Positions 3,847-51,655 of a stretch of 64,000 nt of DNA are shown here, one piece after another; within the stretch, counting starts at the first letter, position 1, and each line of letters opens with the position of its first letter. The notes under the pieces were generated by a model that worked only from the letters and a program-made list of their open reading frames with translations, made no database searches and was not told where the DNA came from. The stretch covers positions 124,001-188,000 of IMG/VR virus record IMGVR_UViG_3300021142_000002; one strand, 5' to 3'. Made by a program: the position numbers and the translations under genes.

Positions 3847-4033
3847 AAGTGCCCTCCATTATTTGTTTGAGTTCTTTTGTTTGTTCAGCAATGCCATGAT
3901 TTAAATGGCTTAAAAATTTAGCTTCAATTTCAGACATAGCATAACCTGTCTTACTTTTAAACTTAGCAGTTACTCTTTTTAATGCATCTAATGAAGATTG
4001 TTTTGTGGTAATTAATTCTTGTCTATTAGCCAA
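3821..4033 (-). CDS. Hypothetical protein
   Basis: 70-aa ORF in co-directional operon. Confidence 0.55.
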   Translation of the reverse strand: MANRQELITTKQSSLDALKRVTAKFKSKTGYAMSEIEAKFLSHLNHGIAEQTKELKQIMEGTYVRNGRNK

Positions 4034-4056
4034 GTTTATTTTCTTCTATGTTATTA

Positions 4057-4458
4057 TTATAAAATTTTAATGCCGGTAGCTACTTCCTCTGCTTTAATTA
4101 AATCTGTTGGCTCCAGTACATAGATTAATTTTTTATCTCTATAATAAACATTTTGAACAATGCCAAAGACTTTTTTCGTAATCTCTTTAATGTAGTTGGG
4201 TAATTCTTTTATAGCACCATAAGGGTAGGGCACATCTATTTCGGCAACAACACCTAGAGTAGTTCTTGTGGTATAAGTCTTACACGGGGCCATTGAATAA
4301 TTTGTGTAGGTAAAAAGCTGAGTACCATCATCTAGTTCTTCCACTGCATTAATATAAATGGGTGCTAAAGTGGTATTAAAGACAAAACGACCAATAATAG
4401 CAGGCTCTTCTAACAGGTAATGCTTTCCTGCCGAAATCTTTATTTTTTCTTCACTCAT
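4057..4458 (-). CDS. Hypothetical protein
   Basis: 133-aa ORF with AGGAG RBS. Confidence 0.65.
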   Translation of the reverse strand: MSEEKIKISAGKHYLLEEPAIIGRFVFNTTLAPIYINAVEELDDGTQLFTYTNYSMAPCKTYTTRTTLGVVAEIDVPYPYGAIKELPNYIKEITKKVFGIVQNVYYRDKKLIYVLEPTDLIKAEEVATGIKIL

Positions 4459-4470
4459 CTTTATTTTCTC

Positions 4471-4929
4471 CTAATAATTATATTTAACAACATTGACCAC
4501 TAGCTTATAATCTAGTGTGTATGAATAATCTACTATTATCTTACCCTGCATCTGCTGGTTTAAAGAACTCGCTAGATTTAACATAATTTGATTAAATCTA
4601 AAAACAAACCAATCCTTTACATCAGTAGGTAGTATAATGTCTTCTACTAAATCAGTAATGGCTGAATACTCTTCAGTTTCATAACCCTCTAATAACCTAA
4701 AGAACTCAGCCATAATTACTTTCGGTTTATTTATTACCAAACCATAAGCCCCTATATGAGGCTCTAAGTATTCCTCATATAGGTTTTTTAGATCTAATAA
4801 GTCAACGAGATATCTTTCATAGATTGGGTCAGGTGAACTTTGAATTAAATTCTCTAATTCTCCTTTAGGGTACAAACTTTCCATTTCTGATATGCTCCTC
4901 TTCCCACATGTTAATCCTAAAGTCACCAA
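4471..4929 (-). CDS. Hypothetical protein
   Basis: ORF in operon; start may be the downstream ATG at 4884. Confidence 0.6.
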   Translation of the reverse strand: MVTLGLTCGKRSISEMESLYPKGELENLIQSSPDPIYERYLVDLLDLKNLYEEYLEPHIGAYGLVINKPKVIMAEFFRLLEGYETEEYSAITDLVEDIILPTDVKDWFVFRFNQIMLNLASSLNQQMQGKIIVDYSYTLDYKLVVNVVKYNY

Positions 4930-5326
4930 AATTCTCTAATCTATAGATGCCCGTTTTAGTTTTCTTTAAAGACCATACATTAAAGGTATCTCTACCCATA
5001 CAGTCGCAGATAATGGAATGGAAATGTTGAACACTGTATAAATCCTCTAATGTATCTGTTAATGTTAACTGATCTATATCCTTATAGATTTCAGTAAACC
5101 ATTCTACTGGATCACTTTTACTAAGAAAAAAATGATCTCTAATACATGTGTTTGTATTACACTCTATTGTGGCTAAGAAATCCTCATATAGCAGTTTTTC
5201 TAAATCCTTTATATATGCATTATTATCCATTTCCCGTCGATATGGATTTACATAGGCTATAATGTAAGATAATACTTCCCTAGAAAGACTGGCTATGTCT
5301 AACATTACAATGCCTTTATTTTGCAT
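4865..5326 (-). CDS. Hypothetical protein
   Basis: 153-aa ORF with GAGGAG RBS. Confidence 0.65.
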   Translation of the reverse strand: MQNKGIVMLDIASLSREVLSYIIAYVNPYRREMDNNAYIKDLEKLLYEDFLATIECNTNTCIRDHFFLSKSDPVEWFTEIYKDIDQLTLTDTLEDLYSVQHFHSIICDCMGRDTFNVWSLKKTKTGIYRLENFGDFRINMWEEEHIRNGKFVP

Positions 5327-5351
5327 TTAAACTCCTCTGACTGAATAAAAA

Positions 5352-5383
5352 GTGTGTACCCATAGGTTACTATGGGTACACAC
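5352..5383 (-). terminator. Hairpin terminator after PhuZ
   Basis: GTGTGTACCCATAG-GTTA-CTATGGGTACACAC, 14-bp stem, T-run follows on minus strand. Confidence 0.75.
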
Positions 5384-5397
5384 GATTTACGTCTTAA

Positions 5398-6378
5398 TTA
5401 CAAAAATAAATCATTATCTTCGACATCATCAAAAACAGGTTGTGAAACTGCTAATAGATTAGTTTTTGATCTTGCATAATCATCAACTATTTTCTTTAAT
5501 GAGGCAACACGATCATTTAAGAATTGATTAGTAATGATAAAATGCATTGCGGGCACGGCATGTTTACTGCTATCTTGAGCCGCTTCATCGCAGTAACCAA
5601 CAGTTGAATAGAGCTGACCTAAGCTAATTTCAGGATCAGCCTTTGAAGTTAATAAACTAGCTACTGAAATAGCAGTTAAACCTTCAATCGTAGTAACCGG
5701 CGTATTAGATACTGAGAATACTAGATCAGTTAATTGCACGGGTACAGCAGTTACTCTTTCATAGTTTAACCAGTTGTCAATGTCTTTAGTATCCAAATGG
5801 TTATTGGTACCTGACAGTAACATTGAAATGGCTCTAAGATCCCCATTAATAGTTTCATCCACCATAAGCATATGTGTGCTTTCACAGTTGGTGTAAAATG
5901 CTACAGTAATTGCTTTGTTTAACTTAGCAGTTAATGTTTGCAAGTTACTTAATGTAGAATAGGCATTATTAGCTTCTTTGGCAGAAGCTGTAGAAATAAT
6001 ACAAAAGCAAATAACTGTTTGATTACGCTTTAATAATTCCTCTACTAATAATGGGGCTAATACGCTACCACTTCCGCCCGATGCACCAAAGACCACTAAG
6101 TTAAAAGCTTTAGGTGGATGCTTTAACAAAATATCATCAATGTGTGGTTTAGCTACTTGATGTGCAAAAGCTCTATTTTTACCAGAACCATCAACACCTG
6201 GAATAATAAATACATCGCCTTTATTTCCTACTTTATGCAGGTTACTGCGGCTAGTATCAATTAAGCTAAAAAACGTTTCAGGAAACCCTGCGCTATCACT
6301 TGGAATGTTAACAGACTGTACTACATTTACACCTGCCCCACCAACTCCATATACTCTTACCGTTGATTGTTTTTTCAT
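5398..6378 (-). CDS. phuZ: PhuZ phage tubulin
   Basis: VYGVGGAGVNV, DTSRSN, DGSGKNR, GASGGSGS tubulin signature; acidic C-tail DDVEDNDLFL; 326 aa. Confidence 0.92.
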   Translation of the reverse strand: MKKQSTVRVYGVGGAGVNVVQSVNIPSDSAGFPETFFSLIDTSRSNLHKVGNKGDVFIIPGVDGSGKNRAFAHQVAKPHIDDILLKHPPKAFNLVVFGASGGSGSVLAPLLVEELLKRNQTVICFCIISTASAKEANNAYSTLSNLQTLTAKLNKAITVAFYTNCESTHMLMVDETINGDLRAISMLLSGTNNHLDTKDIDNWLNYERVTAVPVQLTDLVFSVSNTPVTTIEGLTAISVASLLTSKADPEISLGQLYSTVGYCDEAAQDSSKHAVPAMHFIITNQFLNDRVASLKKIVDDYARSKTNLLAVSQPVFDDVEDNDLFL

Positions 6379-37996: not shown

Positions 37997-38009
37997 TAGT
38001 ATACTCCTT

Positions 38010-38213
38010 TTAAACAGCTAGTTCAGATAATAAAGCAGCGGCTACTAATTCTTCAGTTTCACTTTCTGCTAAAGGAGATTTACCTATTTTATCACCAATC
38101 ATTTCTTTTAAAATAGCAGTCCCTAATGAGACTGCACAAGCGATTGTTTTCTTAGTAATGATTTGTTTTTCTGGTAACTTTTCTTCTACTACTAAATTTA
38201 GATCATCCATCAT
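38010..38213 (-). CDS. Small hypothetical protein
   Basis: 67-aa ORF with GAGG RBS. Confidence 0.5.
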   Translation of the reverse strand: MMDDLNLVVEEKLPEKQIITKKTIACAVSLGTAILKEMIGDKIGKSPLAESETEELVAAALLSELAV

Positions 38214-38423
38214 TTATCCTCTTTTATATTTTAAACCCATTTGTTTAGAAAGCTCTTTTAGTACGGTATTCATAACACCCATAATTTCTGGAGAAACTAC
38301 GATACGTGCAGCAACGGCATAAAATCCAAATAAAGCATCGACTTTAATGCCATTTCTAGCAATAATGGGTGAGGTAGAAACTCGGCTAATAGTAGATTTT
38401 AACTGATTAGCAAACACGACTTT
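38214..38423 (-). CDS. vRNAP beta subunit (gp178-like), exon 2
   Basis: KVVFANQLKSTISR...; restores the conserved GD|K motif; spliced product about 1330 aa. Confidence 0.85.
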   Translation of the reverse strand, partial: KVVFANQLKSTISRVSTSPIIARNGIKVDALFGFYAVAARIVVSPEIMGVMNTVLKELSKQMGLKYKRG

Positions 38424-38755
38424 CCTTTTTGTTCCATTAATTCGTTAGATTAATGCGGTGTGCAAAGACACCCGCCCTTACTTTCATAAGGGAGCAGATC
38501 ATATCATCCACCTATTTGTAGGTGGTTTCCCATTTCTTCCCACTTGGGGTCTACAGGGTGGTAAGCCCTTGATCGTTGAACGTTCTCCATGTATTCTAAT
38601 GAATATTTAGGAGCTTCGCTGCTGATTGCCCAATCTTTATTATTTTTAAACATTCATATTTCTTTTCAAAAATACAGTAGTTAATAAAGCTCTAAGGGAT
38701 TTCCAGCAATTAAGGAAAAACGAATATAATATTACTATTATACCGGACTAATTAT

Positions 38756-39985
38756 TTAATTAAACAACTCTTCAATGATCCAGCCATTATATGGCATTTT
38801 ATAATGTAATCTATTTTTAAGGGTCTTTTTATCTAAACCTAAATATTTACGTAATGTTGCCGAGCTATTGAATTTTAAAATTTCATTATCTTTTATGTTA
38901 GTTATAATAAAATTTCTGGGAACAGAATGTTTAACTGTATAAAAGTTATCTAACCATTCTTTATCACTTTTAGATCTAAAAATAAAATTACCAATAGCAG
39001 TTTGCCGTTCAGAATAAACAGCTTTACGTACCATTGAAATATCAGTATTTGTTATTTTAGCCAGAGTGGTTGCATGTTCTGCATGTATTATTTCACCAGT
39101 TTCAATATTTTTAGCTTCATATCCGTTTGTATTCTCAATTATTTGATTTCGTTTTTCTGGTGTAGTGTAATACCATTCTGTAGTGTCATTGATATCTTTA
39201 ATTTCAAATCTTTTACAGAATAGTCTAGGTATTAAAATGCCATTAATTAATTTCTTAAATGGTCTGTTATGGAATTTTAATCCAATACTTTTAAACCCAG
39301 CAGTGTGAGAATGGTACTCAGTTATAGTATTATTTAAATAATCTCGTATAACACAGCGCTTATTATCAGTTCTTAAATTGCTAATAAAGGCATGATTATT
39401 ATTTTCTCTTGGCGTAACCCATTCCAAATTAATTATACGGTTATCTAATTTATTACCATTTTTATGATTAACATAAATTTTGTTACTTATATCGCTATTA
39501 TATATAAATGCTTTAGCCATCAGCAAATGTGTACATACGGGACGCCATCTATTTTTATCAGGATCCCTAATATTAACACATGGATATCCATAAGGATTTA
39601 GTCTTATACTCATTTCTAAATCTTTATTTTTATATAACGAAATAACTTTACCATTCTTATTTATAGCAAAATTAGTAAAACCAGGAATTATTCTAAACCC
39701 ATTCTTATAAAGAATAGGGTTAGTAAAATACATTACCATACCACATCTAACCTTTAATACCCTGCTAGTTATTGGCATAAATTTTATTTTAACTAATTCA
39801 TTAAGGGGTAACTTTACATCATAATGGCATAATAAACTAACCCATGTTTTATCCAATTGCACTATTTCACCAGAAATTTCTATATCAATAAATTGATCGT
39901 TTAAAACTATATCTTTTCCCTTAAATCTATAATTTCCATTAATATCAAATGAATGGTCTTCATTAAGATAAAATTTTTTATACAT
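38756..39985 (-). CDS. Intron-encoded HNH homing endonuclease
   Basis: THLLMAKAF...VNHKNGNKLDN...NLEWVTPRENNNHA; C-terminal NUMOD1-like repeats. Confidence 0.92.
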   Translation of the reverse strand: MYKKFYLNEDHSFDINGNYRFKGKDIVLNDQFIDIEISGEIVQLDKTWVSLLCHYDVKLPLNELVKIKFMPITSRVLKVRCGMVMYFTNPILYKNGFRIIPGFTNFAINKNGKVISLYKNKDLEMSIRLNPYGYPCVNIRDPDKNRWRPVCTHLLMAKAFIYNSDISNKIYVNHKNGNKLDNRIINLEWVTPRENNNHAFISNLRTDNKRCVIRDYLNNTITEYHSHTAGFKSIGLKFHNRPFKKLINGILIPRLFCKRFEIKDINDTTEWYYTTPEKRNQIIENTNGYEAKNIETGEIIHAEHATTLAKITNTDISMVRKAVYSERQTAIGNFIFRSKSDKEWLDNFYTVKHSVPRNFIITNIKDNEILKFNSSATLRKYLGLDKKTLKNRLHYKMPYNGWIIEELFN

Positions 39986-40018
39986 GTTATTTAACCTATA
40001 AATGATTGAATGTGTGTA

Positions 40019-40045
40019 TAAATAATATATATCTTAAAGAAATTT
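40019..40045 (-). promoter_or_regulatory. Early-type promoter inside intron, upstream of HNH
   Basis: Minus strand TTTCTTTAAGATATATATTATTT. Confidence 0.5.
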
Positions 40046-40064
40046 GTGTTTATTAAAAGGAATA

Positions 40065-43000
40065 ATCACCGCAATTCATTGGCAGCTCACCATCTATATA
40101 GATTTTAATAGCCAATTGATTTTCTACCACTTTCTTACCTGCTATTCGTACCGTCTCATCTATTCGTCCAGTCTTAGCTTCATCTAATTGATATCGCTTT
40201 ACACGCTTAGCTCTATTGGAGTCATAATACTCTGCAATCTTTTGCAAACTAAAATGCATATCATCTATTTTTCCATAGTAAACCACTTCAATATCAGTTA
40301 CTTTACCATAGACTTTAGCTTTCGGATTATTAGCGTTAATAGCTGTTAAAGCCTTAATAGCTGCGGCATCTTTAGCATCCACATTCTCGCCAATAGCCTG
40401 CTCTAAAGTACATAATATTGTTTCAGGGTCCACTACATCACCTATTTTTACTAGGTTATGAATGATGGTATCAAAGTCTACTATTACCCCGTGCAGAGTC
40501 GTTGTAGGCGTTACTAATTTACTAGCCAGTTCACTAGTAATAACTGATCCATCTTCAGTAACATCCATATTTTCTACTAAAGCTACTTTACAAATTAAGC
40601 TGCCTTTATAGACAACATTTCTAGGATTTATTTCTGATCTTTGAAAGAATCCAGAGTTAAAGACTAATGCATCACCTTTTTTAAACTGATGTCCTTTCTT
40701 TAAATCACTGATTCTAGTATGAGGTATAGTAACACCCGATACAGTACCATGATAAATACCTAATTCATAATTAACCAGTCTATCTTTACCATACTTAACA
40801 GTTAAAACATCTTTTTTATTATCTTCTACAATACCATCTTCTTCTGCAGTAACAACAAAGATATCATCTGCTTTAGCACCAATGACTTCTTCATAACCTG
40901 TTCTATAATGACTAGGATGATATCCATTGCAGGCAACTGTATGACTATCCTGAATGCCTTTATAATTTACGCGTTTACTATCATCGTGACTTAATGAAAC
41001 ACCAGCTAGGGTGGTACTACTTAATGCATTAGTGGCCCCATCTTTCTCATGATTAAATTCTCTAGTAACTCCTCTTAAATTGACAAAGTTAGGATTAGCT
41101 GTAAAGTATGCTCTAATACCTACCTTAGCACTATCTGGAGTAGACTCCGATATAACACCTAAATCCTTTTCATTATAAGCTCTAGTCTCCTTTACCATTG
41201 TTTCAGCAGATCTACCACCTGCGCCGCCATGAGTAAAAGATTCATGCTCCTTTAGATTGTGCAGTGGATTACTTTCTTCTACTAATGATACTGACTGATC
41301 TTGAATGATATCTAGCCAAACCGATTTAGGATTAATAGTCACACCCACATTACTCATACTACCACCTGCCCTGTGAGTACGCATAGCAGTAATCAATTGA
41401 TGGTATAACAAGCCCGATAGTCTTTCATAACCTTTATACCTAACTGCATTTAAATCATGTACAAAGTCATCCACTAATAAGCTATTAGCTCTTAATAATA
41501 AATGATAAAAATCAGTAGGCTCTCCCATCTCCTTTAATAGATTAAGAGTAATGGGTTCCATCCACATATCAAACATTAGTTTTAGTTCTCTTAAGTGATA
41601 ATTAGTGACACCTAATCCACTCATTAAACTACTGTAAATATTAGGTCTATTAAAGTCACTTCCTTTATATTTAGAGATATCATTTTTAATAGCCAGTAAT
41701 CCACCGACTATTAATTTATCTGCAGGTTTAGTTACTGTAATAACGTAGACGATATCTTTAAACTTTAGTTTAACTTCATCTGGATGATAAGCTAATCTTA
41801 CATTAGTTGCTGAGAGTGTAAAAGGTATTTGTAATTTCTTTAACATCTCATCTAAACCAAAGAGATAAGAAAAAGCTAGGCCTAATGGAATACGTCTATT
41901 AAAGACTGACATTTCAGAATATTCAATAGGTCCATTACCTAATGATGGATCTATTAAATAAGGTATAGTGCCTAATTCCTCAATTGAATCAGCTTTGGTG
42001 GATCTAATACCACTACCCCAGAATGTATAAACAGTCCCCTCATTATCCATTCCTAATAAACCTAATCCGCCAATTAACTCCCCAACTACCACGCAGTCTT
42101 CATCCTTAATTTTTTCATATAAAGAATGATCGTATTCATGTAATTTCTTTTCTATAGCAAAGTCTAAATGATATTGGAATCTAATAATTCCATCTACTAA
42201 AAATCTTCCACAGTCAAAACTGGTAATTGCTTCACAAATAGCCGTATAAGCTCTAGGTAATTGCAGATTCTTTATTTTATTAATACCATAGAGTAGATTA
42301 CCAATAGTTCCATCATTTTTAGTAAATCTATTTATAATCTCTTTTAAAATCCATTTACTGTAGTTACTTGCTACACTTTCATTTCTAGTAACAAATATCT
42401 TTCCATAATAACTAGTCAAAGAAACAGTATTAGATTTTACCTTAAAAATTGGAAGTTCTCCGCGCTGACTAGTTAAAGAATAGCGTATTCCACCAGCTAC
42501 GAAAGTACCATCAGCATTAACTACTGGTATAGTAAAATGAATAGTACTCGCCTCCCCATTAATAGGTTGCAGTGATACACTGTAGGTATCAGATTTAGTA
42601 ACTGCATTATTCTTTCTTTTTACTTTAATATCCTTTACTATTACCCCACCTTTGTGTAAATTTAACACTGTGGCTATAATATCTTTAGGCAATACTTCAG
42701 TAACGTATTTACTCGTAAATTCTTTCATGGTAGAGTGTAGCATACTCTCATCATGAATAGTAATACTTTCATCTAATAATTTAGTATCAGTAATAGTTAA
42801 ATCATTATCGGTAATTGCCATTTCCTCTAGTGTCTTGCCAGAGCCATGAGGGTCTAATATTGTCTTATACTTTTGACTGAGTTTTAATAATCCTTTTTGT
42901 TCAGCTTCAGATAGAGCACCCATTTCTCCAGCTTCTTTAATCTTCCTTACAATGACTTCGTTAGATACTAAATCATTTTCCCCTAAGTCCTTATCATTAA

Positions 43001-43847
43001 TATCTACAATGTCTGGATTGTTAGGTGTTCTTAAAGCTACTATACCATCCAGAAAGTGATATAAGCTATTCATGCAGACTTCAGGATCTTCATGTGACCA
43101 ATCTAATAGATCCTTTAATCTAATGATAATAGTATTATTTAACTCTACAAAGACTAGATTAACATGTTCGATCGCTTCATCAGATACTTTAGTAATAACT
43201 GATTCAATACTAGGGTTAATGATTCTCCATAATTCTAATAAGTCAAAACTCTCATTAGTGTGAAAATCTGCTAGTCCATTACTCGTAAAGTTCTTAGTAT
43301 ATTTACTTAAGTCAGATCGAGTAGGCAATATCTCTGGCAGTAGATATCTAATAAAGTGCTCTCTCCTACCACCAATCTGATTAATCATATCCCACATAGT
43401 CAGTCGAATGTTATACCATTCTTGATAGACGACTAAGGTATTATTAGTATACTTATTTAATCTAGGCAATAGAGCATAGTTAATAACAATAGGGGCACTA
43501 TTGTTACTTAATGACCTATCTAGATTAGTCAATGGTTTAATATTTAGATGTGTTTTTTGATATCGTCTGATAACATTATTAATAGGTATATTGGTGCTAC
43601 TTACATTGCCAATACCTACCTTTAAATGTAGCATGTGATAAATATAGATTGGGCTACTATTTCCATTTCTAATTAAACAATAGGAGTTGTCTATCCCTAC
43701 TGTTTGATCAGTTTCCCCAATATAGTGAATAACACTATTACTGGGTAGAAAAAACTGACTCGATGGATTATGTTTACCACCATTGACTATCTTACCAATG
43801 GGATAAGTCAAAAACTTTTTATCCCATTCTTTTATTGGTAAATACAT
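40065..43847 (-). CDS. vRNAP beta subunit (phiKZ gp178-like), exon 1
   Basis: SQRGE.P, GGAGGRS, ISE.TPDSAKVG, DDSKRV, EDGSVI, ending ..MNCGD; the track ORF reads 3 codons into the intron. Confidence 0.9.
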
Positions 43848-43856
43848 TACTTACTC

Positions 43857-44021
43857 CTATTCATATATTTTAGTAAAGCTATTGAGCACGAGTGGACTAA
43901 CTTTATCAATAACTCCGTATAATAATCCGCCACTAGGATTCATAAATGATTTTTTATTATTCATAAACTTTTTAGCTTCCTCTACCGCTTCTTTTGAGAT
44001 TACAAAATTTAGAGAGACTTT
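43857..44021 (-). CDS. vRNAP beta-prime subunit (gp180-like), exon 2 (absent from ORF track)
   Basis: KVSLNFVISKEAVEEAKKFM...KIYE*, 54 aa; its stop overlaps the AGGAG RBS of the next gene. Confidence 0.85.
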   Translation of the reverse strand, partial: KVSLNFVISKEAVEEAKKFMNNKKSFMNPSGGLLYGVIDKVSPLVLNSFTKIYE

Positions 44022-44534
44022 CGATTTGTTCAGATGAAGTCGTTAATTTCACCTCGCAGCATTACCTGCAGCTATAACTCTCGTTATAGACCAGACTATA
44101 TCTTCTACCTATTAATATATTCATTAATATACCAATAGGCAGCTTCCCATTTCTTCCCACTTGGGCTTTACACCGTGGTTAGCGGTTAGTCGTTGAACGT
44201 TCTCCATGTATTCTATAGAATATTTAGGAGCTTCGCTGCTGATTTTCTCTACCTAATAGTTTTCAAACATTGGTATTACTTTTCAATAATACAGTAGTCT
44301 ATTAGTCTAACAAGATGTTCCAGCAATTAAAGAAGAATCTATCCCAGTATTACTACTGAGTAGGACACTGATACTTAAACTATTTTATACTTAAAATGCC
44401 AATCTGAATTAATGGGTATTCCATTTAGATTCCTAATAATAGCTTTTCGGTTTACTCGAGTAACACCTTCAGCTATTTATAAGTATTACGATAAAAAGTA
44501 TTCAGAAAAATAAGTACAACTAGAATAAGCTAGA
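44022..44534 (-). mobile_element. Group I intron (513 nt, no intact ORF) in vRNAP beta-prime gene
   Basis: P AAUUGCUGGAAC, Q AAUCAGCAG, R GUUCAACGACUA, S AAGAUAUAGUCUG; exon ends in U, intron ends in G. Confidence 0.9.
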
Positions 44535-45992
44535 ATCACCATCGAAATCTGCTTGTAATCCTTCGGGTTTAGAACTGTGTACCGATACTGAATCTATAAA
44601 AGGTTGTCCTTTAATAGGCATGTTTATAGCCTTAGATTCATTTTCTACAGGACACCAATTATCATCCAATCTTTGCAGAATTTCTGTTTTTACTGTTGTT
44701 TGCAGGTAAACCATACTGCAGTAAATACTGCCTGTACCTACAATGGGATATCTTGTTATATAGGTAGCTACTTCTTTACTTTGTAGATAAACGGAAATAT
44801 AAAACATTTCAGTCCAAGTAATAGGTGCTACATTCTTTCTATCTAAACGTTTAGGTAAATCAGTAATGTCATAAAAGACCCTAAAGTATTTATCATCCCT
44901 ATAAAGCAATGCTGCATAATGACCATCTATTATAATAGGCTTATGCCTTGCATCTAATTTAGCATAACCAGTTAATAGTTTTTCAATACCTTTTTCACTG
45001 CCCCAATTATCTTTAACAAAAGTAGAAGGTGTAATCATTCTTTCTTCTAATGTCTTGCTATCGACTACCCAGATATCATTAGGTAAGTTATTGACTATTC
45101 TATTCATTGGACCTGCTTTAATTCCATAGATAGATAGCTCAGTAGTACCCTTTAAATACTGGTGTAAACCACAGGTTGTATCATTAACAGTAACTGCATC
45201 TATATCGCCTAATTTCTTAGGAGCAGGATCAATTGCAGTGATTACATTTCGTGTTCCGCCATGAATACTGCGGCTTGCCCATTTGGATAAGAAGAATCCT
45301 CTTTTACCCTCAAGGATAGATTCTATGTAATCATAGATGTTATTAAATCCTAATTGGAGAGACCATCTAACAGTATCTAAGATGGGATCATTTTTAGCGG
45401 TAGAGAAAGTAGAAATAGTATTAGCAGATCGCATGACTTTTCTATAAAGCGCGTTAATGTCATCTTCAACAGTTCTTTTATTTTCATCTATTTCAATGTC
45501 TCTAAGACCTGCTGGAATAACGACTAAATACCGATACATACATTTTTCATGAGACTTATCTAGAAACTTAATTCTTAAATCTCTAATCGGTGAATTATTT
45601 TCAGCATGTAAGATATCATGAAAGTGTTCCATAAAGAAGGCATAACCTGTTCTGCCATCTATGATATTAGATTTTACAAAGTCTTTTAGATTATTATCCC
45701 AAGTAGCATAAGCTGCTCCAGACATAATAAGTTTATATAAACCTTTTAATCTAGTGAGTTCTAAAAAGACTTTAGGATGCATGACTTCAGTACGCATGTC
45801 TATATAAGACAGTCTTCTTTGTCTAGTAGGTGATCCAAGATCACCAAAGATAATAGATGAATATAAACCTTGTGGATTAAATGATCCATCAATGGTATAA
45901 ATATCCATTGACTGAGTAGGCAGTAAGCCTGCTAATCGACTCTTATCAGGAGAGAGTAGATATAAATTAAATGGTAATCGCTTGAGTGCCAT
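44535..45992 (-). CDS. vRNAP beta-prime subunit (phiKZ gp180-like), exon 1
   Basis: FNPQGLYS..IFG, VIPAGLRD, GKRGF..KWASR....TRNVIT, RYP, catalytic ADFDGD; spliced product about 540 aa. Confidence 0.92.
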
Positions 45993-46033: not shown

Positions 46034-49000
46034 ATGGCTAAGAATAAAGAATTTGATTTAGAAAAAATGGGTGAAATGGATGACGATAAATTACTCAATG
46101 CATTAGAGGCTGCCTTTGGTGATGACGATGATTTATTTGATACAGAAATTAAAGATAATAGAAAACCGACTACAGTTATTAAAGATACCATAGTCGATGC
46201 TTTCTCTGGTACGGATAATATCTTAAAGGTAACTAAGTCTCTTATTAAAAGAGCATTGCCAGATAGCTATGGTGATACCATGGATACACTTGAGAATGTA
46301 TCCAGGGATGTTAAAGATACTTATGACGATACTGTTTATAAGTTAGAGCCTGCTATTAATAATGTTAAATTAGGCATTAAAGGTGCTCTTCCTACTATAG
46401 AAAAGATACTGCCTGCGGGAATGGCTAGAAAGATTAAAAAGTTTGCAGAAACTGCAAATGAACAACCTTATTCTGACTATAGTAAAAAGGATTATCAGGG
46501 TGAAGAAATTAGTAATACGATTCAAACTATCTTTGGTGCTGAAGTAGCAGAAAGAGAAGTTAGGGAACGTAAGGCTAATATACATAGGAATATTGACAGG
46601 ACTATAAATAAAAAACAGTTTAAAGTCAGTGCTACTCTGCAAACCCATATGGCTAACAATATAGGTCGTATTGTTAGTTATCAAGATGAAGTATTAGATA
46701 AGTACTATAGAAAATCTTTAGATCTTCAATACCGTTCATACTTTGCTTTAAGATCATTATTAGATCTAAAGAAAGATGAAGTAGTTTCTAATAAGATTCG
46801 ATTTGATAATATCATTAAAAATACTGGTTTACCAGATATTGTAAAAAGTAGATTAAATGAAGATTTTAAAACAGAGTTAAGAAATAGATTAATTGGTAGA
46901 GTACATGATGATTTAGCTACTCGATTAAGAAACTTACCAACTAGAACGCGTGATAGATTAAAAGAAACTATTCGTGGGATAGTAGAAGGTTTTTCAGGTG
47001 CTGCAGAAAGTAGTGTTTCATTAAATGAACAATTCTCTGGCTTGCCATTAGGTGAAATGGCTAAGATGGAGGGTGGGGATTTTGCCAGACATCATCTAGG
47101 TGCACAAATTGGTAAAAAGTTTAGAGATACTATACCTAAATATTTAAATAAAGTAAATCCAAACATTTGGGGATCTATTGAAAACTTTGGTAATACTCTA
47201 AAAAGATACCATTCTGAATGGCCAGGTTATTTAAATAGAAAGTTTGGTGAAGGTAAAGGAATACTAGGTCAAATAGGTACTCTAACAGGTACTGAGTTTG
47301 GCGATACAAACACTATTAATAATAGCTTAGTAGCTGATGCTACTACTGCTACACCTTGGGATACATTATCTAGAAGAACTCTAGTAGAAATTATTCCAGG
47401 TTATTTGTCAAGAACTTTAAATGAAATATCTGGCATACATGCTTTATTAGCCGGTAAAGAAACGCCCAATGAAGTAGTTTATAGCCATGAGTTTGAAGAC
47501 TTTGTTACTAAAAAGAAAGCATTAAAACAAATAAGAAAAAGATTTAGAGGCACAATAGGCAGTGGATTGAAAGATAAGATTAATGCTATTATTGATATAG
47601 TAGATCCAGATGGCACTAAATTATCTGAAAGTGAAAGAGTAGAATTAGGTGGTATCATTGTAAAGGAATTAAGAAAAGGTAATAACTTTGATCCTAGAGA
47701 TTTTGCTGATCCTTATAATTTAGACACACCTAAAGCAGAAAAATATGCTCAGTTATTTAGGGATACTTTTAATATAACTGAAGAGATGGTAGAAGAAGAT
47801 GGCTTTTTAACATCTAAACTACAAGTAGGTGGTGCGGGGGAAGCTAATCTTAAACATAAAAATGCTGCTTTACTATATGGTGAGGCTAGAGGTAGTTTAG
47901 GGAACTACAATGCTTTATTAAATGAATATTTTAAAACAGGCAATAAATCATTACTGCGTGAGTTAGGTATTTTAAAAGAAGAAACTGGAACACTCCATGT
48001 TAATAATGACTATAAAAATAGAGATATTAGAGAATGGTTAAAATTAGGTAATAAAGGTAATTATACTGCTGAGGCAAAAGCCTATTATGAAGGTACTGAT
48101 ACTACCATGGGTCCACCAAAGCCATCACAAACATTTGCAGGATTCCAATTAGGTGGATTAGGTGAAAAAATAGATAAAATAACGCATGAAGAAACTTTAA
48201 GTAAGTTATACAAATTAACAGAAACTAATGATGATAAGAAATTAGCATTATTAGAATCTATTAATGATAGATTACTAAATTTTGGTTATTTTACCCCACC
48301 CCATGAGTCATCTGAAAATATTAATGCTTCCCACGGTTCAGTAACTGTACGAACTAGTAGAAGAAAAAATAATCAAAGAACAACCATTCCTGTTAATCAG
48401 CCTACACCTGCACCAGCTACACCATTTTCTATTTATGAAATGATGCAAATGGTAAAAGATTATGGTGGTAAAATGTCATTGCATGATGCTACTGGTTTAA
48501 TGAATAAGATAGCAAATGCCGGTGGTTATTTAAATACCTCTAGTACAACTATTCGCAATTTATTAAAAAGAGTTACTAAATCCACTGCTAAAGAAATGAA
48601 AAAGGCAGATGCATTTAATGCCACTGGTCATCCTGCTATGGGAAAAACATGGGCTACTCCGGTACAACATCAATTTAATTATGACTTTACTACAGGCACT
48701 AAAGAGTCTACTAGTAAAGGTAATGATAGAGAAATGCCTAAGGTTTATAAAATTCCTAATGGGAAATATCTATACCTTCATGATAAATTAACGGGTGAGT
48801 GGAAAGTTAGGGATTCTGAAACCGATGAACCTTGGATGGATATCGAAAAGCCTGATGCAGAGCTAGTTAAAAAGTTTGTTCCCGCAGACAAAGAAAAACC
48901 TAAATCCTCTAGTACCAAGGCTAAAGGTGGTACTAAAGAAGAAAATGTAAAAAAACTTCGTAAAGGATTAGCAGGTTTATTTATAGGTACAGGTAGATTA

Positions 49001-51655
49001 GTAAGAAAAGGAGTTAGAGGTTATTTTAAAGCTTTAATGCCTGCTAAAAAATATATCAATAAAAAAATTGATAATGCAGCAATTAAAGTATTTAAAAAGG
49101 TATTAGATCCAACAGGCATGTTTACCAGTATGTTTTCTTCTATATCGGCTACAATAGGTGAAATAATTGAAAGAAGAGATGATCGAATAGATTTTACACT
49201 GCACTCTATTTTAGATTATTTAAAACAAGCTATACCTGGAAAAGATTCTGAAGAAAAAGAAGCTATGCGTGAAGGTGGCTGGAAAAGTATACAAGAACAT
49301 CGCAAGCAAAAGATGGAAGAAAATAAGAAAAAGAAAGCTGAAGAAAAAGCAGAATCAGATTCTAAATGGAAAGGTGCTCCAAAAAACGATACTGTTGGTA
49401 AAGTAGGCGGTTTTATGGATAACATCCTTAGTAAAGGATTAGACTTTATTAGTAGTTTAGGAATACCAGAATTACTAGGTGGTGTAGGCGCATTTCTTGG
49501 TGCTACTAATATAGGTAGAACTGTAGTGGGTGCTACAGAAGCTTTAGGTGGTTTAGTTGCAATGGCTACAGAAGGTGCTATTGCAGCAATGGCTACGTTA
49601 GCTATGCCTGAAGTAGCTATGATAGCGGGTACAGTAGCTGCTGTGGGTGCAACAGCTTATGCGGCCTATAAAGGATATGAAGCATTAAATAGAAGGCGAT
49701 CTTTAGATAGATTAGAGAAAATACGCTTTATGCAATATGGTATTCCATTAGATAATGGAAGAGCTATTGGTAAAGTTAGATTCTTAGAAGAAACTATTGA
49801 TGACGTTTATACCTTTGGATCAAATGGAGCCGCTAAATTAAAGTTAAAGCTACAAGAAATTTGGGAAAAATATTATTCAGATTTTGATTGGAGAGCTGAA
49901 GATGAACGTGGGGCTAAAGCTTTTATGGATTGGTATATTAGACGATTTGTACCAGTTTATGTTAAGCATAGAACTGTAGCTAGTATCTTAAAAATTACTT
50001 TAGATGAATTAGATTCAACACTTAAAGATGAAGATCTATCTGCTTATGTTAAAGCTATTCAGTTTGGACCTAAAGATAAAGAAGGTAAATTAGATCCTTA
50101 TAACATTACTATTTCTCCTTTTAGATATTATTCTTTGGAAAATAGACTCGAAACATTAAGTCTCTATTGCCAGCAGTTAATTATTGAGGGCGATAAAGCT
50201 AATGAGGGAAAAGATGATGCCTCTAAAAATAACTTAGATCCAAAAGAATTATCTAAAGCAGTTACTAGTACACCTGGTAAAAGAAAAGAAAACGAAGATA
50301 AAAAAGTAGCTGATGAAAACTTAAAGAAGGTTAATGCGGTTAATGAATCCGAACAAAAAGAAGCTAAGAAAGAGCAAGAGAAATCTACTCTAGAAAAGAT
50401 ATCAGATTTTGTTAAAGATAAATTTGGTGTTGATGTTCCTGCGGCGGCTAATAATGTTAAAAACTTTGTTGGTAGAGTGGGTGAAGATTTAGCTGTGGGC
50501 GCTAAAAAGTTACCAGGTGCAATTGGTGGATTTGTTAATACCAAGATAGTACAGCCTGTTAAAAATTCATTAGCTGGATTAATATCTGGACATGAATCGG
50601 GTGGTAATTATGATATTGCTAATCGTGGTAATATTAATGGTCATAACTTAGGTATATCAACTGCTAAAGTAAGTACCATGACTATTGGCGATATCTTAGC
50701 CGCTAATAAGAAATCGGCTAGTGACCCATCTAGAATTTTGGCTGCTGGTAAATATCAGTTAATTACACCTACATTAGCTGATGCTGCTAAACAATTAAAT
50801 TTACCAATGACCACTGTATTTGACAAAAAGACTCAAGAGTATATTTTTGCTAAATACTTATTAGGCATTAAAGGAAATACTAAGCTCCTTAATGCTTATA
50901 TAAAAGGTAGCGATGTAGATAAAATGAAGATGATGAAAAATCTAGCCAGAGAATGGACTAGTATTGCTGATCCTTATACGGGTAAAACAGCTGGCGGTGC
51001 TGGCAATAAAGCATTTGTTACCGCAGATCAAGCATTAGCAACTATTGATAAAGCTAGGGCTATGTATGCTTCATTTAAAGAAATGGGTTTATCAGATGAT
51101 GAAGCTTTCCAGCAAGCAGTAGCATCTGATGGAACTAATGTTCCCTTAACTAATTTGGCAGGCTCTGCAGCTAAACCTGATGCTGGTAATGGTGAAATGG
51201 TTCAAGCTACTCCTCCAAAAATAGCTGCACCAACACTAGCCAATGGCGCTAATAATTCTGTGGCTAGTAATGTTATTCCACCACCCGCTGCTGCTCCTAA
51301 TGTAGATAAATCTAAGACGTTAGAAGCTGCATCGGCAGACAATGCCAAATCTACTAATACGGTGGCCGTTAATAATTCTAGTCCTGCACCTTCCGCTGGT
51401 CCTAGAGCTAATAACTATCCAGATCTTACACATGTTAGTAAAGCTATTAATAGTACATCTGCCGATGCCAATAAACAGCGTGATGCTCAAATAGCAGAAC
51501 AGCAAAAAACTAATATGTTGTTAGCTCAACTCACTGATAGTTTAACAGCTAGTTTAAATGATAAGAATATACCCACTACATTGATGAAACCGTCAGAAAG
51601 TCCTGTAGTAAAACAAAAAGTAAATCCTGTTATTAATTTAGCAAGAAATATTTAA
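46034..51655 (+). CDS. Large tail protein with lysozyme domain (phiKZ gp181-like)
   Basis: 1873 aa; TLVEIIPGYLSR, RFMQYG, C-terminal HESGGNY..AAGKYQ..T..F....Q..REW.SI; synteny after gp180. Confidence 0.8.
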   Translation: MAKNKEFDLEKMGEMDDDKLLNALEAAFGDDDDLFDTEIKDNRKPTTVIKDTIVDAFSGTDNILKVTKSLIKRALPDSYGDTMDTLENVSRDVKDTYDDTVYKLEPAINNVKLGIKGALPTIEKILPAGMARKIKKFAETANEQPYSDYSKKDYQGEEISNTIQTIFGAEVAEREVRERKANIHRNIDRTINKKQFKVSATLQTHMANNIGRIVSYQDEVLDKYYRKSLDLQYRSYFALRSLLDLKKDEVVSNKIRFDNIIKNTGLPDIVKSRLNEDFKTELRNRLIGRVHDDLATRLRNLPTRTRDRLKETIRGIVEGFSGAAESSVSLNEQFSGLPLGEMAKMEGGDFARHHLGAQIGKKFRDTIPKYLNKVNPNIWGSIENFGNTLKRYHSEWPGYLNRKFGEGKGILGQIGTLTGTEFGDTNTINNSLVADATTATPWDTLSRRTLVEIIPGYLSRTLNEISGIHALLAGKETPNEVVYSHEFEDFVTKKKALKQIRKRFRGTIGSGLKDKINAIIDIVDPDGTKLSESERVELGGIIVKELRKGNNFDPRDFADPYNLDTPKAEKYAQLFRDTFNITEEMVEEDGFLTSKLQVGGAGEANLKHKNAALLYGEARGSLGNYNALLNEYFKTGNKSLLRELGILKEETGTLHVNNDYKNRDIREWLKLGNKGNYTAEAKAYYEGTDTTMGPPKPSQTFAGFQLGGLGEKIDKITHEETLSKLYKLTETNDDKKLALLESINDRLLNFGYFTPPHESSENINASHGSVTVRTSRRKNNQRTTIPVNQPTPAPATPFSIYEMMQMVKDYGGKMSLHDATGLMNKIANAGGYLNTSSTTIRNLLKRVTKSTAKEMKKADAFNATGHPAMGKTWATPVQHQFNYDFTTGTKESTSKGNDREMPKVYKIPNGKYLYLHDKLTGEWKVRDSETDEPWMDIEKPDAELVKKFVPADKEKPKSSSTKAKGGTKEENVKKLRKGLAGLFIGTGRLVRKGVRGYFKALMPAKKYINKKIDNAAIKVFKKVLDPTGMFTSMFSSISATIGEIIERRDDRIDFTLHSILDYLKQAIPGKDSEEKEAMREGGWKSIQEHRKQKMEENKKKKAEEKAESDSKWKGAPKNDTVGKVGGFMDNILSKGLDFISSLGIPELLGGVGAFLGATNIGRTVVGATEALGGLVAMATEGAIAAMATLAMPEVAMIAGTVAAVGATAYAAYKGYEALNRRRSLDRLEKIRFMQYGIPLDNGRAIGKVRFLEETIDDVYTFGSNGAAKLKLKLQEIWEKYYSDFDWRAEDERGAKAFMDWYIRRFVPVYVKHRTVASILKITLDELDSTLKDEDLSAYVKAIQFGPKDKEGKLDPYNITISPFRYYSLENRLETLSLYCQQLIIEGDKANEGKDDASKNNLDPKELSKAVTSTPGKRKENEDKKVADENLKKVNAVNESEQKEAKKEQEKSTLEKISDFVKDKFGVDVPAAANNVKNFVGRVGEDLAVGAKKLPGAIGGFVNTKIVQPVKNSLAGLISGHESGGNYDIANRGNINGHNLGISTAKVSTMTIGDILAANKKSASDPSRILAAGKYQLITPTLADAAKQLNLPMTTVFDKKTQEYIFAKYLLGIKGNTKLLNAYIKGSDVDKMKMMKNLAREWTSIADPYTGKTAGGAGNKAFVTADQALATIDKARAMYASFKEMGLSDDEAFQQAVASDGTNVPLTNLAGSAAKPDAGNGEMVQATPPKIAAPTLANGANNSVASNVIPPPAAAPNVDKSKTLEAASADNAKSTNTVAVNNSSPAPSAGPRANNYPDLTHVSKAINSTSADANKQRDAQIAEQQKTNMLLAQLTDSLTASLNDKNIPTTLMKPSESPVVKQKVNPVINLARNI

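What the first reader, a model, noticed from the sequence alone, without database searches (positions are those of the whole stretch)
38424..44534. Twin group I introns at an identical GGTGAT^AAAGTC junction in adjacent vRNAP beta and beta-prime genes
Seen: removing 40064-38424 gives NCGD|KVVFANQ, and removing 44534-44022 gives ADFDGD|KVSLNF; both junctions are GGT GAT | AAA GTC. The cores share exact blocks (TTCCCATTTCTTCCCACTTGGG, TCGTTGAACGTTCTCCATGTATTCTA, GAATATTTAGGAGCTTCGCTGCTGATT on +), and P7 covaries (GAUCA/UGAUC vs GACUA/UAGUC), indicating working ribozymes. Identity outside the 12-mer is low. Known: group I introns favour conserved motifs and can transpose by reverse splicing guided by the internal guide sequence. 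Inference: one intron lineage jumped between two non-homologous essential motifs (GDK and the catalytic DFDGD) through a shared 12-nt target, so vRNAP assembly depends on two splicing events. One endonuclease might even mobilise both. I know of no description of this paired arrangement.
Basis: partly seen in the sequence, partly recalled or inferred. Interest (0 to 1): 0.85.

Follow-up and report, generated by a model that had tools for sequence, protein, structure and literature searches.

The report
Two related introns splitting phage RNA polymerase

Summary
Intron A (44534-44022, 513 nt, no ORF) splits the beta-prime N gene (phiKZ gp180 homologue) after DFDGD. Intron B (40064-38424, 1641 nt, 409-aa HNH endonuclease) splits the beta gene (gp178 homologue) at GD|K. 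Both junctions read GGTGAT|AAAGTC, and identity stops at that 12-mer. Both cores pass the Rfam group I model (77 and 63 bits), and removing them restores uninterrupted matches to the phage protein families.

The "twin jump" reading is only partly right.
- Intron A has orthologues at the same site in at least five other phages and keeps the last ~29 codons of their endonuclease gene.
- The endonuclease of B has orthologues (38-46% identity) at the same beta site in distant phages.
- The guide sequence is only G-U-C and pairs with the exon GAU. This is shown by covariation with GCC/GGU relatives. The ribozyme therefore cannot specify 12 nt.
- The link between the sites is still real. Ribozyme B nests among beta-prime DFDGD| introns (SH-like support 0.99), and the endonucleases of the three "G-D/G|K" sites form one clade.
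- One 46-nt tract (P6) is 95% identical only between A and B, which suggests recombination within the genome.

Introns in jumbo-phage RNA polymerase genes are already known (phiKZ, 201phi2-1, PhiPA3).

The parts
44535..45992 (-). Exon 1 of the virion RNA polymerase beta-prime N-terminal subunit (phiKZ gp180 homologue), ending ...ADFDGD
   Evidence: phrog_2986 E=1e-163, profile positions 3-488. 35% identity to phiKZ gp180, E=1e-95.
44022..44534 (-). Intron A: ORF-less group I intron (513 nt) with P7.1/P7.2. It begins after U and ends in G.
   Evidence: RF00028 77 bits at 44386-44072. Sequence read. Same-site orthologues in L005, L100, L101, L102 and L159.
44375..44464 (-). Remnant (about 29 codons plus stop) of the 3' end of a beta-prime-site-type HNH endonuclease gene inside intron A
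   Evidence: Frame-1 translation ends ...VNRKAI.R.L.GI.I.SDWHFKYK, matching the C-termini of the L005 and L101 intron endonucleases.
44364..44366 (-). Internal guide sequence G-U-C of intron A, just 5' of P2. It pairs with the exon GAU, with a U.G wobble at the splice site.
   Evidence: Invariant (A/U)GUCC in all GAU| introns. It changes to GCC in the 12 or more relatives whose exon ends GGU.
43857..44021 (-). Exon 2 of beta-prime N (54 aa plus stop), starting KVSLNF
   Evidence: phrog_2986 positions 490-538. Sequence read.
40065..43847 (-). Exon 1 of the virion RNA polymerase beta subunit (phiKZ gp178 homologue), ending ...NCGD
   Evidence: phrog_3148 E=0, up to profile position 1354. 35% identity to gp178, with the alignment ending at GD.
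38424..40064 (-). Intron B: group I intron (1641 nt) carrying an endonuclease gene in the loop of P1
   Evidence: RF00028 63.3 bits at 38768-38475 when searched alone. Same-site introns in L011, L012, L014 and L053.
38756..39985 (-). Intron-encoded HNH homing endonuclease, 409 aa (HNH_3 plus NUMOD1-like)
   Evidence: Pfam HNH_3 E=5e-8; NUMOD1 at 21.8 bits, just under its cutoff. phrog_59 E=5e-28. Full-length homologues at 35-46% identity; the three whose genomic context was checked (38-46%) sit at the same beta site.
38746..38748 (-). Internal guide sequence G-U-C of intron B (within UAGUCC). P1 is GAU|UA paired with UAGUC.
   Evidence: The same P1 forms a compact hairpin in the ORF-less beta-site intron of L053. 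Covariation.
38214..38423 (-). Exon 2 of beta (69 aa plus stop), starting KVVFANQ
   Evidence: phrog_3148 positions 1355-1422. Contiguous with exon 1 in the intron-less alleles of L005 and phiKZ.

Best explanation
Both elements are working-type group I self-splicing introns of subgroup IA architecture, with P7.1 and P7.2. They belong to one large, modular family that colonises the RNA polymerase genes of phiKZ-like jumbo phages.

Splicing (inferred):
- Each intron is transcribed within its host gene and folds.
- It aligns the 5' splice site through a 3-bp exon/guide helix, exon GAU with guide GUC and a U.G wobble.
- It then splices out, restoring beta-prime N (...DFDGD-KVS...) and beta (...GD-KVVF...).

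Why the two sites look alike:
- The ribozyme reads only GAU. Family members therefore sit after many Asp codons in conserved motifs, namely AD|, ADFD| and DFDGD| in beta-prime, and DD| and GD| in beta.
- The wider identity, consensus GGNGAT|ARA, arises because both proteins read G-D-K there.
- The HNH homing endonucleases serving three sites form one related group. The sites are beta GD|K, the paralogous non-virion beta HGG|K and beta-prime DFDGD|K. The beta-prime site is a mimic of the beta site, and this lineage colonised it.

History in this phage (inferred):
- Intron A is an old resident that has lost its endonuclease gene.
- Intron B has an intact beta-site-specific endonuclease, but its ribozyme is closest to beta-prime-site introns of related phages.
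- A and B have exchanged a P6-P6a tract.
- The pair therefore results from site switching plus recombination among co-resident introns, not from one recent jump.
For: Shown:
- Junctions and restored reading frames.
- Rfam scores of 77 and 63.3 bits.
- 51 of 68 consensus pairs carry compensatory changes across 11 homologues.
- Guide-sequence covariation, GAU|:GUC against GGU|:GCC.
- Intron A orthologues at DFDGD| in L005, L100, L101, L102 and L159, with junctions GGWGAT|AAA(GTC, GTA, TTA, TGT, ATG) and GGCGAT|AGAGTT.
- Endonuclease gene remnant in intron A.
- Endonuclease B homologues at the same beta site.
- The L005-type endonuclease also occupies the non-virion beta SGD|K / HGG| site.
- The endonuclease score matrix shows three site-specific clades that are closer to each other than to phiKZ gp179 or the mid-beta enzymes.
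- Core tree: B is sister to the L101 beta-prime-site intron (SH-like support 0.994), inside the beta-prime DFDGD| clade (0.835).
- The P4'-P6-P6a tract is 44/46 identical only between A and B, against 47-69% for every other pair compared.
- K after DFDGD is typical of the window's clade, whereas T or M is typical of the more distant relatives.

Inferred: splicing itself, endonuclease specificity, and the direction and mechanism of the site switch.
Against: - No RNA data exist for this uncultured phage.
- Long-read transcriptomics of phiKZ did not detect splicing of the predicted gp56/gp72/gp179 introns (PMC10914365). However, the FDGD of phiKZ gp180 lies in the downstream exon, so splicing there seems obligatory.
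- The cores are mosaic, so a single tree is an imperfect summary.
- P1 of intron A is weak: 3 bp, then a U-U mismatch, then 2 bp.
- L005 has an empty beta site with the same 12-mer as its occupied beta-prime junction. Sequence mimicry alone therefore does not lead to invasion.
- The endonuclease relationship rests on 25-38% identities.
Confidence: 0.6

Rival explanations
1. Recent twin origin. One intron copy in this genome transposed directly between the DFDGD|K and GD|K sites, guided by its internal guide sequence through the shared 12-mer. A and B are then each other's closest relatives.
For: Identical 12-mer. Three long identical blocks and a P6 tract 95% identical. A and B fall in one 8-tip clade with support 0.96.
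Against: - Overall core identity between A and B is only 64-70%, no higher than for A against several other introns. The nearest relative of B is L101 at 74%.
- The endonuclease remnant in A and the endonuclease of B belong to different site-specific clades.
- Both sites are occupied by orthologous introns in other phages.
- The guide sequence pairs with only 3 exon bases.
Confidence: 0.1
2. Independent acquisitions with no causal link. Each intron arrived by ordinary homing from other phages at its own site. The identical 12-mer is a coincidence of two G-D-K-V motifs and biased codon usage.
For: - Site-specific orthologues exist for both introns.
- Given G-D-K-V, identical codons have p of about 0.05, which is not extreme.
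- GD|K and DFDGD are conserved for protein reasons.
- The intron family inserts after many Asp codons.
Against: - Ribozyme B nests within the beta-prime DFDGD| introns rather than with the other beta GD|K introns.
- The endonucleases of the three G-D/G|K sites are mutually closest.
- All six DFDGD| junctions examined have a Lys or Arg codon (ARA) next, like the beta site.
- The same 12-mer coincidence recurs in L005, with different synonymous codons.
Confidence: 0.2
3. Whole-intron replacement. An incoming beta GD|K intron with its endonuclease gene homed into this phage. Its ribozyme was then largely overwritten by gene conversion from resident beta-prime-site introns, so no ectopic transposition ever occurred.
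For: - The mosaic domain pattern of B. P4-P5 is 82% identical to L101 (beta-prime site), P6 is 95% identical to A, and the 3' domain is 78% identical to L053 (beta site).
- Recombination between co-resident T4 introns is known (from memory: Bryk and Belfort 1990).
Against: - It does not explain why beta-prime DFDGD| endonucleases are related to the beta-site and non-virion-beta-site enzymes.
- It does not explain why that site always has a beta-like downstream codon.
- It is a variant of the best explanation rather than a true alternative.
Confidence: 0.1

Closest known systems
phiKZ gp179 intron in gp180 (predicted by Mesyanzhinov et al. 2002, as cited in PMC10914365)
   Same: Same gene (virion RNA polymerase beta-prime N) and same intron family: 58-66% core identity to A depending on the alignment, RF00028 92 bits. 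The HNH endonuclease gene lies between the 5' splice site and the guide sequence, and the exon ends in GAU.
   Different: It is inserted 12 nt upstream (AD|FDGD, GCGGAT|TTCGAC). Its endonuclease belongs to a different clade. Splicing was not detected in published long-read RNA data (PMC10914365).
PhiPA3 gp210 intron in the virion RNA polymerase beta gene gp211/209 (Birkholz et al. 2024, PMC11620839)
   Same: A group I intron with an HNH nicking endonuclease, in the gp178-type beta gene, inserted directly after a conserved Asp codon. Related cores occur in Serratia phage 2050HW and in L011, L012 and L014 at that site.
   Different: Different site (HDD|, about 290 codons upstream of GD|K). That site is uninterrupted in the window. 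Its competitive role was shown experimentally, and nothing was tested here.
201phi2-1 gp273/274 mobile intron in virion beta (PMC2919709)
   Same: The virion RNA polymerase beta gene is split by a mobile intron, yet the protein runs as one band. This is a precedent for obligatory splicing of this polymerase.
   Different: The position was not compared here.
T4 td / nrdB / sunY introns and Twort multi-intron genes (from memory and PMC3984707)
   Same: Several related subgroup IA introns in one phage genome. Endonuclease genes evolve independently of the ribozymes, and recombination occurs between intron cores.
   Different: Those introns do not share an extended identical exon junction in non-homologous genes.
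rDNA group I introns that moved between sites by proposed reverse splicing (PMC3984707 and its references 55, 86)
   Same: Related introns at different sites, taken as indirect evidence for ectopic transposition.
   Different: Those cases lie within a single rRNA gene and are attributed to 4-6 nt of guide pairing. Here the guide reads 3 nt, the hosts are two unrelated protein-coding genes, and endonuclease relatedness tracks the look-alike sites.

Membership tests
Group I intron (Rfam RF00028), subgroup IA architecture | Conserved catalytic core P3-P9 scoring above the curated threshold | tested here: met
   A 77 bits. B 63.3 bits. Threshold 50 bits.
Group I intron (Rfam RF00028), subgroup IA architecture | The 5' exon ends in U, paired as a U.G wobble with the guide sequence in P1 | tested here: met
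   Exon GAU pairs with guide GUC. It covaries with GGU/GCC in 12 or more relatives. P1 of A is weak beyond 3 bp.
Group I intron (Rfam RF00028), subgroup IA architecture | The intron ends in G (omega-G) and its removal restores the reading frame | tested here: met
   Intron-less alleles are contiguous at the same codon.
Group I intron (Rfam RF00028), subgroup IA architecture | Extra helices P7.1 and P7.2 between P7 and P3' | tested here: met
   Both hairpins are present, with compensatory changes.
Group I intron (Rfam RF00028), subgroup IA architecture | GTP-dependent self-splicing | not testable with these tools
   No RNA or biochemical data are available.
HNH (I-HmuI-like) intron homing endonuclease | HNH catalytic domain | tested here: met
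   PF13392 E=5e-8, 32.9 bits against a 24.8-bit cutoff. phrog_59.
HNH (I-HmuI-like) intron homing endonuclease | NUMOD-type DNA-binding modules | tested here: inconclusive
   NUMOD1 scores 21.8 bits against a 22.8-bit cutoff. Homologues carry NUMOD1 or NUMOD4.
HNH (I-HmuI-like) intron homing endonuclease | Cleaves or nicks the intron-less allele near the insertion site | not testable with these tools
   Shown for PhiPA3 gp210 only (PMC11620839).
Recent intragenomic twin (duplicate) introns | The two copies are each other's closest relatives | tested here: not met
   The nearest relative of B is the L101 beta-prime-site intron at 74%. A and B are 64-70% identical.
Recent intragenomic twin (duplicate) introns | Same endonuclease gene lineage in both copies | tested here: not met
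   The remnant in A matches the L005/L101 type. B matches the L011/L012/L014 type.
Reverse-splicing transposition guided by the internal guide sequence | The guide is complementary to 4-6 nt of both target sites | tested here: not met
   Only 3 exon bases pair, and no consistent P10 with AAAGTC was found.

The most novel reading that the evidence does not exclude
This locus and its relatives may record a natural ectopic transposition of a group I intron and homing-endonuclease lineage between non-homologous protein-coding genes. The move would be from the beta HG(G/D)|K motif to the beta-prime catalytic DFDGD|K motif, made possible by target mimicry (GGNGAT|ARA). The intact endonuclease of intron B, or a beta-prime-type enzyme encoded elsewhere in the 220-kb genome, might still act on both intron-less alleles. 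One enzyme would then maintain an ORF-less partner in trans.
Probability: 0.3. Interest if true: 0.65.

Novelty: new member of a known kind. Interest (0 to 1): 0.45.

Why it matters
**Ectopic movement of group I introns.** Direct evidence for this is scarce and mostly comes from rDNA (PMC3984707). Here three look-alike sites in three RNA polymerase genes carry related endonucleases and intermixed ribozymes. This gives a testable system for how an intron and its endonuclease colonise a new essential gene.

**An intron hot spot at the catalytic motif.** The universal NADFDGD motif of beta-prime has at least four insertion points in jumbo phages. A 3-nt guide sequence explains why the introns sit after Asp codons.

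**Annotation.** Many jumbo-phage beta-prime N genes, including phiKZ gp180, are annotated as truncated proteins that lack part or all of the Asp triad or the C-terminal exon.

**Phage competition.** An intron endonuclease in this same polymerase acts as a weapon between co-infecting phages (PMC11620839). A phage armed at two polymerase sites is therefore relevant to phage-phage competition.

Tried and rejected
- **Rfam on the whole window and on 38000-40400.** Intron B was missed. This was a filter artefact, resolved by searching the core alone.
- **P10 pairing between the guide region and AAAGTC.** Nothing consistent was found.
- **A conserved UGGACA/UGAACA motif 7-9 nt before the 3' splice site.** RNAalifold paired it with the guide. 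It does not covary when the guide changes from GUC to GCC, so that pairing is rejected.
- **Alternative guide candidates near the 5' ends.** AAUCAUU in B and GUUACU in A were considered. They were dropped because homology and covariation point to the GUC just 5' of P2.
- **Megablast of the 8-kb region against GenBank phages.** It found only a 110-nt intron core match. The phage has no close cultured relative.
- **Fetching the non-virion beta gene of this same phage.** The attempt failed because the contig was not among the 56 loci returned.
- **Sequence search of solved structures with the beta C-terminal region.** It gave only a weak match to the bacterial beta HDD region. The equivalence of GD|K to bacterial RHGNKG therefore rests on the non-virion paralogue motif HGG|KGV and is an inference.
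- **One contig look-up (P0101).** No DNA was returned.
Full report
**What is there.** The window comes from an uncultured phiKZ-like jumbo phage of about 33% G+C. It has no close relative among GenBank phages: proteins are about 40% identical at best. On the minus strand lie the homologues of phiKZ gp180 (virion RNA polymerase beta-prime N; 35% identity) and gp178 (virion beta; 35% identity).

- Intron A runs from 44534 to 44022, and intron B from 40064 to 38424.
- Each follows a U and ends in G.
- Both exon junctions read GGTGAT|AAAGTC.
- Removal gives ...ADFDGD-KVSLNF... and ...NCGD-KVVFANQ...
- The exon pieces abut without gap or overlap on the PHROG profiles: 3-488 with 490-538 for phrog_2986, and up to 1354 with 1355-1422 for phrog_3148.
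- Intron-less alleles in a 65%-identical relative (L005) and in phiKZ are contiguous at exactly the GD|K codon boundary.

**Are they ribozymes?**
- Core A scores 77 bits against Rfam RF00028.
- Core B was lost by the speed filters in wide scans but scores 63.3 bits when searched alone. The threshold is 50 bits.
- Both have P7.1 and P7.2 between P7 and P3', which is the subgroup IA architecture.
- An RNAalifold consensus over 11 family members recovers P2 to P9.2. In it, 51 of 68 pairs carry compensatory changes.
- The P7 and P7.1 differences between A and B are compensatory.

**The guide sequence.** All family members whose 5' exon ends in GAU carry (A/U)GUCC immediately 5' of P2.
- In the ORF-less beta-site intron of L053, this forms a compact P1 hairpin, GAU|UA-loop-UAGUC.
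- In the paralogous non-virion beta gene, introns sit at HGG|K. There the exon ends in GGU and the guide is GCC in at least a dozen loci.
- This A-U to G-C covariation identifies the guide and shows that it reads only three exon bases.
- No consistent P10 with the 3' exon was found.
- The 409-aa endonuclease gene of B therefore lies in the loop of P1.
- Because the guide covers only GAU, it cannot account for a shared 12-mer.

**How unusual is the 12-mer?**
- Flanks beyond it are unrelated: 8/34 and 5/34 identical.
- The identity reflects G-D-K-V in both proteins. Given those residues, identical codons have p of about 0.05 from this genome's codon usage.
- L005 shows the same coincidence with different synonymous codons. 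GGAGATAAAGTA occurs both at its occupied beta-prime junction and at its empty beta site.

**Distribution of the two sites.**

The beta-prime NADFDGD motif is an intron hot spot, surveyed in 120 protein clusters and about 80 metagenome loci.

| Insertion point | Where seen |
|---|---|
| AD\| | phiKZ and about 16 loci |
| ADFD\| | L012, L033, L044, L054 |
| DFDG\| | L098 and others |
| DFDGD\| | window, L005, L100, L101, L102, L159, L160 and several further clusters |

- DFDGD| junctions read GGWGAT|AAA(GTC, GTA, TTA, TGT, ATG), and GGCGAT|AGAGTT in L159.
- The L005 and L101 introns at this site carry a 466- to 469-aa HNH endonuclease.
- Intron A retains the last ~29 codons of that gene, so A is an ORF-deleted derivative.
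- The beta GD|K site is occupied in the window phage, L011, L012, L014 and L053, and empty in about 35 other loci.
- The endonuclease of B has 35-46%-identical, full-length homologues. The three I looked up (38-46%) sit at this same site.
- Among everything surveyed, only the window phage has both DFDGD| and GD|K occupied.
- Multi-intron virion polymerase loci are nevertheless common. L011 and L012 have three introns each.

**Are A and B twins?** No.
- Core identity between A and B is 64-70%. That is similar to A against several other introns, and below B against the L101 beta-prime-site intron at 74%.
- Their endonuclease lineages differ.

**The two sites are nevertheless linked.**
- In a tree of 64 family cores, B is sister to the L101 beta-prime-site intron (SH-like support 0.994). 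It lies inside the DFDGD| clade (0.835), away from the other beta GD|K introns.
- The endonucleases fall into three site-specific clades: virion beta GD|K, beta-prime DFDGD|, and non-virion beta SGD|K / HGG|. These are mutually closer (106-219 bits, sharing an N-terminal domain of about 95 aa) than any is to phiKZ gp179 or the mid-beta enzymes (53-83 bits).
- The L005-type enzyme occurs both at beta-prime DFDGD| and at the non-virion beta site.
- Lys after DFDGD is characteristic of the window's clade, whereas more distant relatives mostly have Thr or Met. The beta-prime site in this clade therefore mimics the beta HG(G/D)|KG site.

**Mosaicism.** By domain, B best matches different introns.

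| Domain of B | Best match | Identity |
|---|---|---|
| P4-P5 | L101 (beta-prime site) | 82% |
| P4'-P6-P6a | A | 44/46, 95% |
| 3' domain | L053 (beta site) | 78% |
| 3' domain | L101 (beta-prime site) | 76% |

The 95% identity in the P6 tract is unique to the A-B pair. Every other intron compared is 47-69% identical to A or B there. This points to recombination or gene conversion between co-resident introns.

**Mechanism proposed.**
- Shown: the anatomy, the junctions, the core fold, guide covariation, the distribution of occupied and empty sites, and the relationships among ribozymes and endonucleases.
- Inferred: both introns self-splice to restore the two virion polymerase subunits. The endonuclease group recognises a core around GGNGAT|ARA. 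Mimicry of that core let the lineage colonise the non-homologous beta-prime site. Ribozyme modules are then shuffled among introns sharing a genome.
- Not resolved: whether the ectopic step used reverse splicing or relaxed endonuclease cleavage followed by illegitimate repair. These are the two routes discussed in PMC3984707.
- One enzyme serving both sites is unlikely. The beta site is conserved through about +20 (GTGTTTGCTAATCA), where the beta-prime site is unrelated.

**Relation to the literature.**
- Introns with HNH endonucleases in jumbo-phage polymerase genes have been predicted in phiKZ since 2002 for gp56, gp72 and gp179 (PMC10914365).
- A mobile intron splits the 201phi2-1 virion beta gene, and the protein still runs as a single band (PMC2919709).
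- The PhiPA3 gp210 intron, inserted after DD in beta, is characterised functionally (PMC11620839).
- I found no paper describing DFDGD as an intron hot spot or look-alike targets across subunits. The searched library is incomplete.
- phiKZ gp180 is annotated as ending at ...GAD. Its FDGD lies in an unannotated exon downstream of the gp179 intron.

**Verdict.** Interest is moderate.

Noticed in passing
L002 (phiKZ AF399011) 3858-5300 and 5301-5488: phiKZ gp180 is annotated as a 490-aa protein ending ...GAD. The gp179 HNH gene and a 92-bit group I core follow it. An unannotated exon then begins FDGDTVSFN, so the catalytic Asp triad of the virion polymerase is only completed by splicing.
   Followed up: partly
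L016 8411-9099 (ENA ERZ724020 NODE_2079): Two group I introns lie in tandem in the non-virion beta gene, separated by a mini-exon of about 12 nt (AAAGGGGTTAAC). L107 and L109 have only the second site occupied. L014 4299-4988 also has two adjacent cores in mid-beta.
   Followed up: no
L005 840-851 and 7460-7471: The relative L005 has the identical 12-mer GGAGATAAAGTA at its occupied beta-prime junction and at its empty beta site. It differs from the window's 12-mer only at two synonymous positions. This could be chance (p of about 0.05) or a trace of past occupancy with co-conversion.
   Followed up: partly
window 44026-44031 and 38429-38434; all family members: A conserved UGAACA/UGGACA motif lies 7-9 nt upstream of the 3' splice site. 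It is complementary to the guide GUCC but does not covary with it. Its role is unknown.
   Followed up: partly
window 38424-38768: Rfam scans of the whole window and of a 2.4-kb stretch missed intron B completely. The same core scores 63 bits when given alone. Default filters can therefore hide ORF-bearing, AT-rich group I introns.
   Followed up: yes
P0111, P0125, P0126, P0135, P0139; L100 11811-12512: In several relatives the beta-prime N gene, or its second exon, is fused to a GNAT acetyltransferase domain, giving proteins of about 700 aa.
   Followed up: no
L103-L158 (non-virion beta loci): The non-virion beta motif reads HGG|KGV, matching bacterial RHGNKGV. It carries a family intron in about 20 of 56 IMG/VR loci, which makes it one of the most frequently occupied sites I surveyed, alongside beta-prime AD|.
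   Followed up: partly
window 46034-51655 (+): A divergently transcribed 1873-aa ORF lies next to the polymerase genes. Its counterparts in relatives (about 1850-2730 aa) carry lysozyme, glucosaminidase or M23 peptidase domains, as does the phiKZ gp181 tail-associated endolysin.
   Followed up: no
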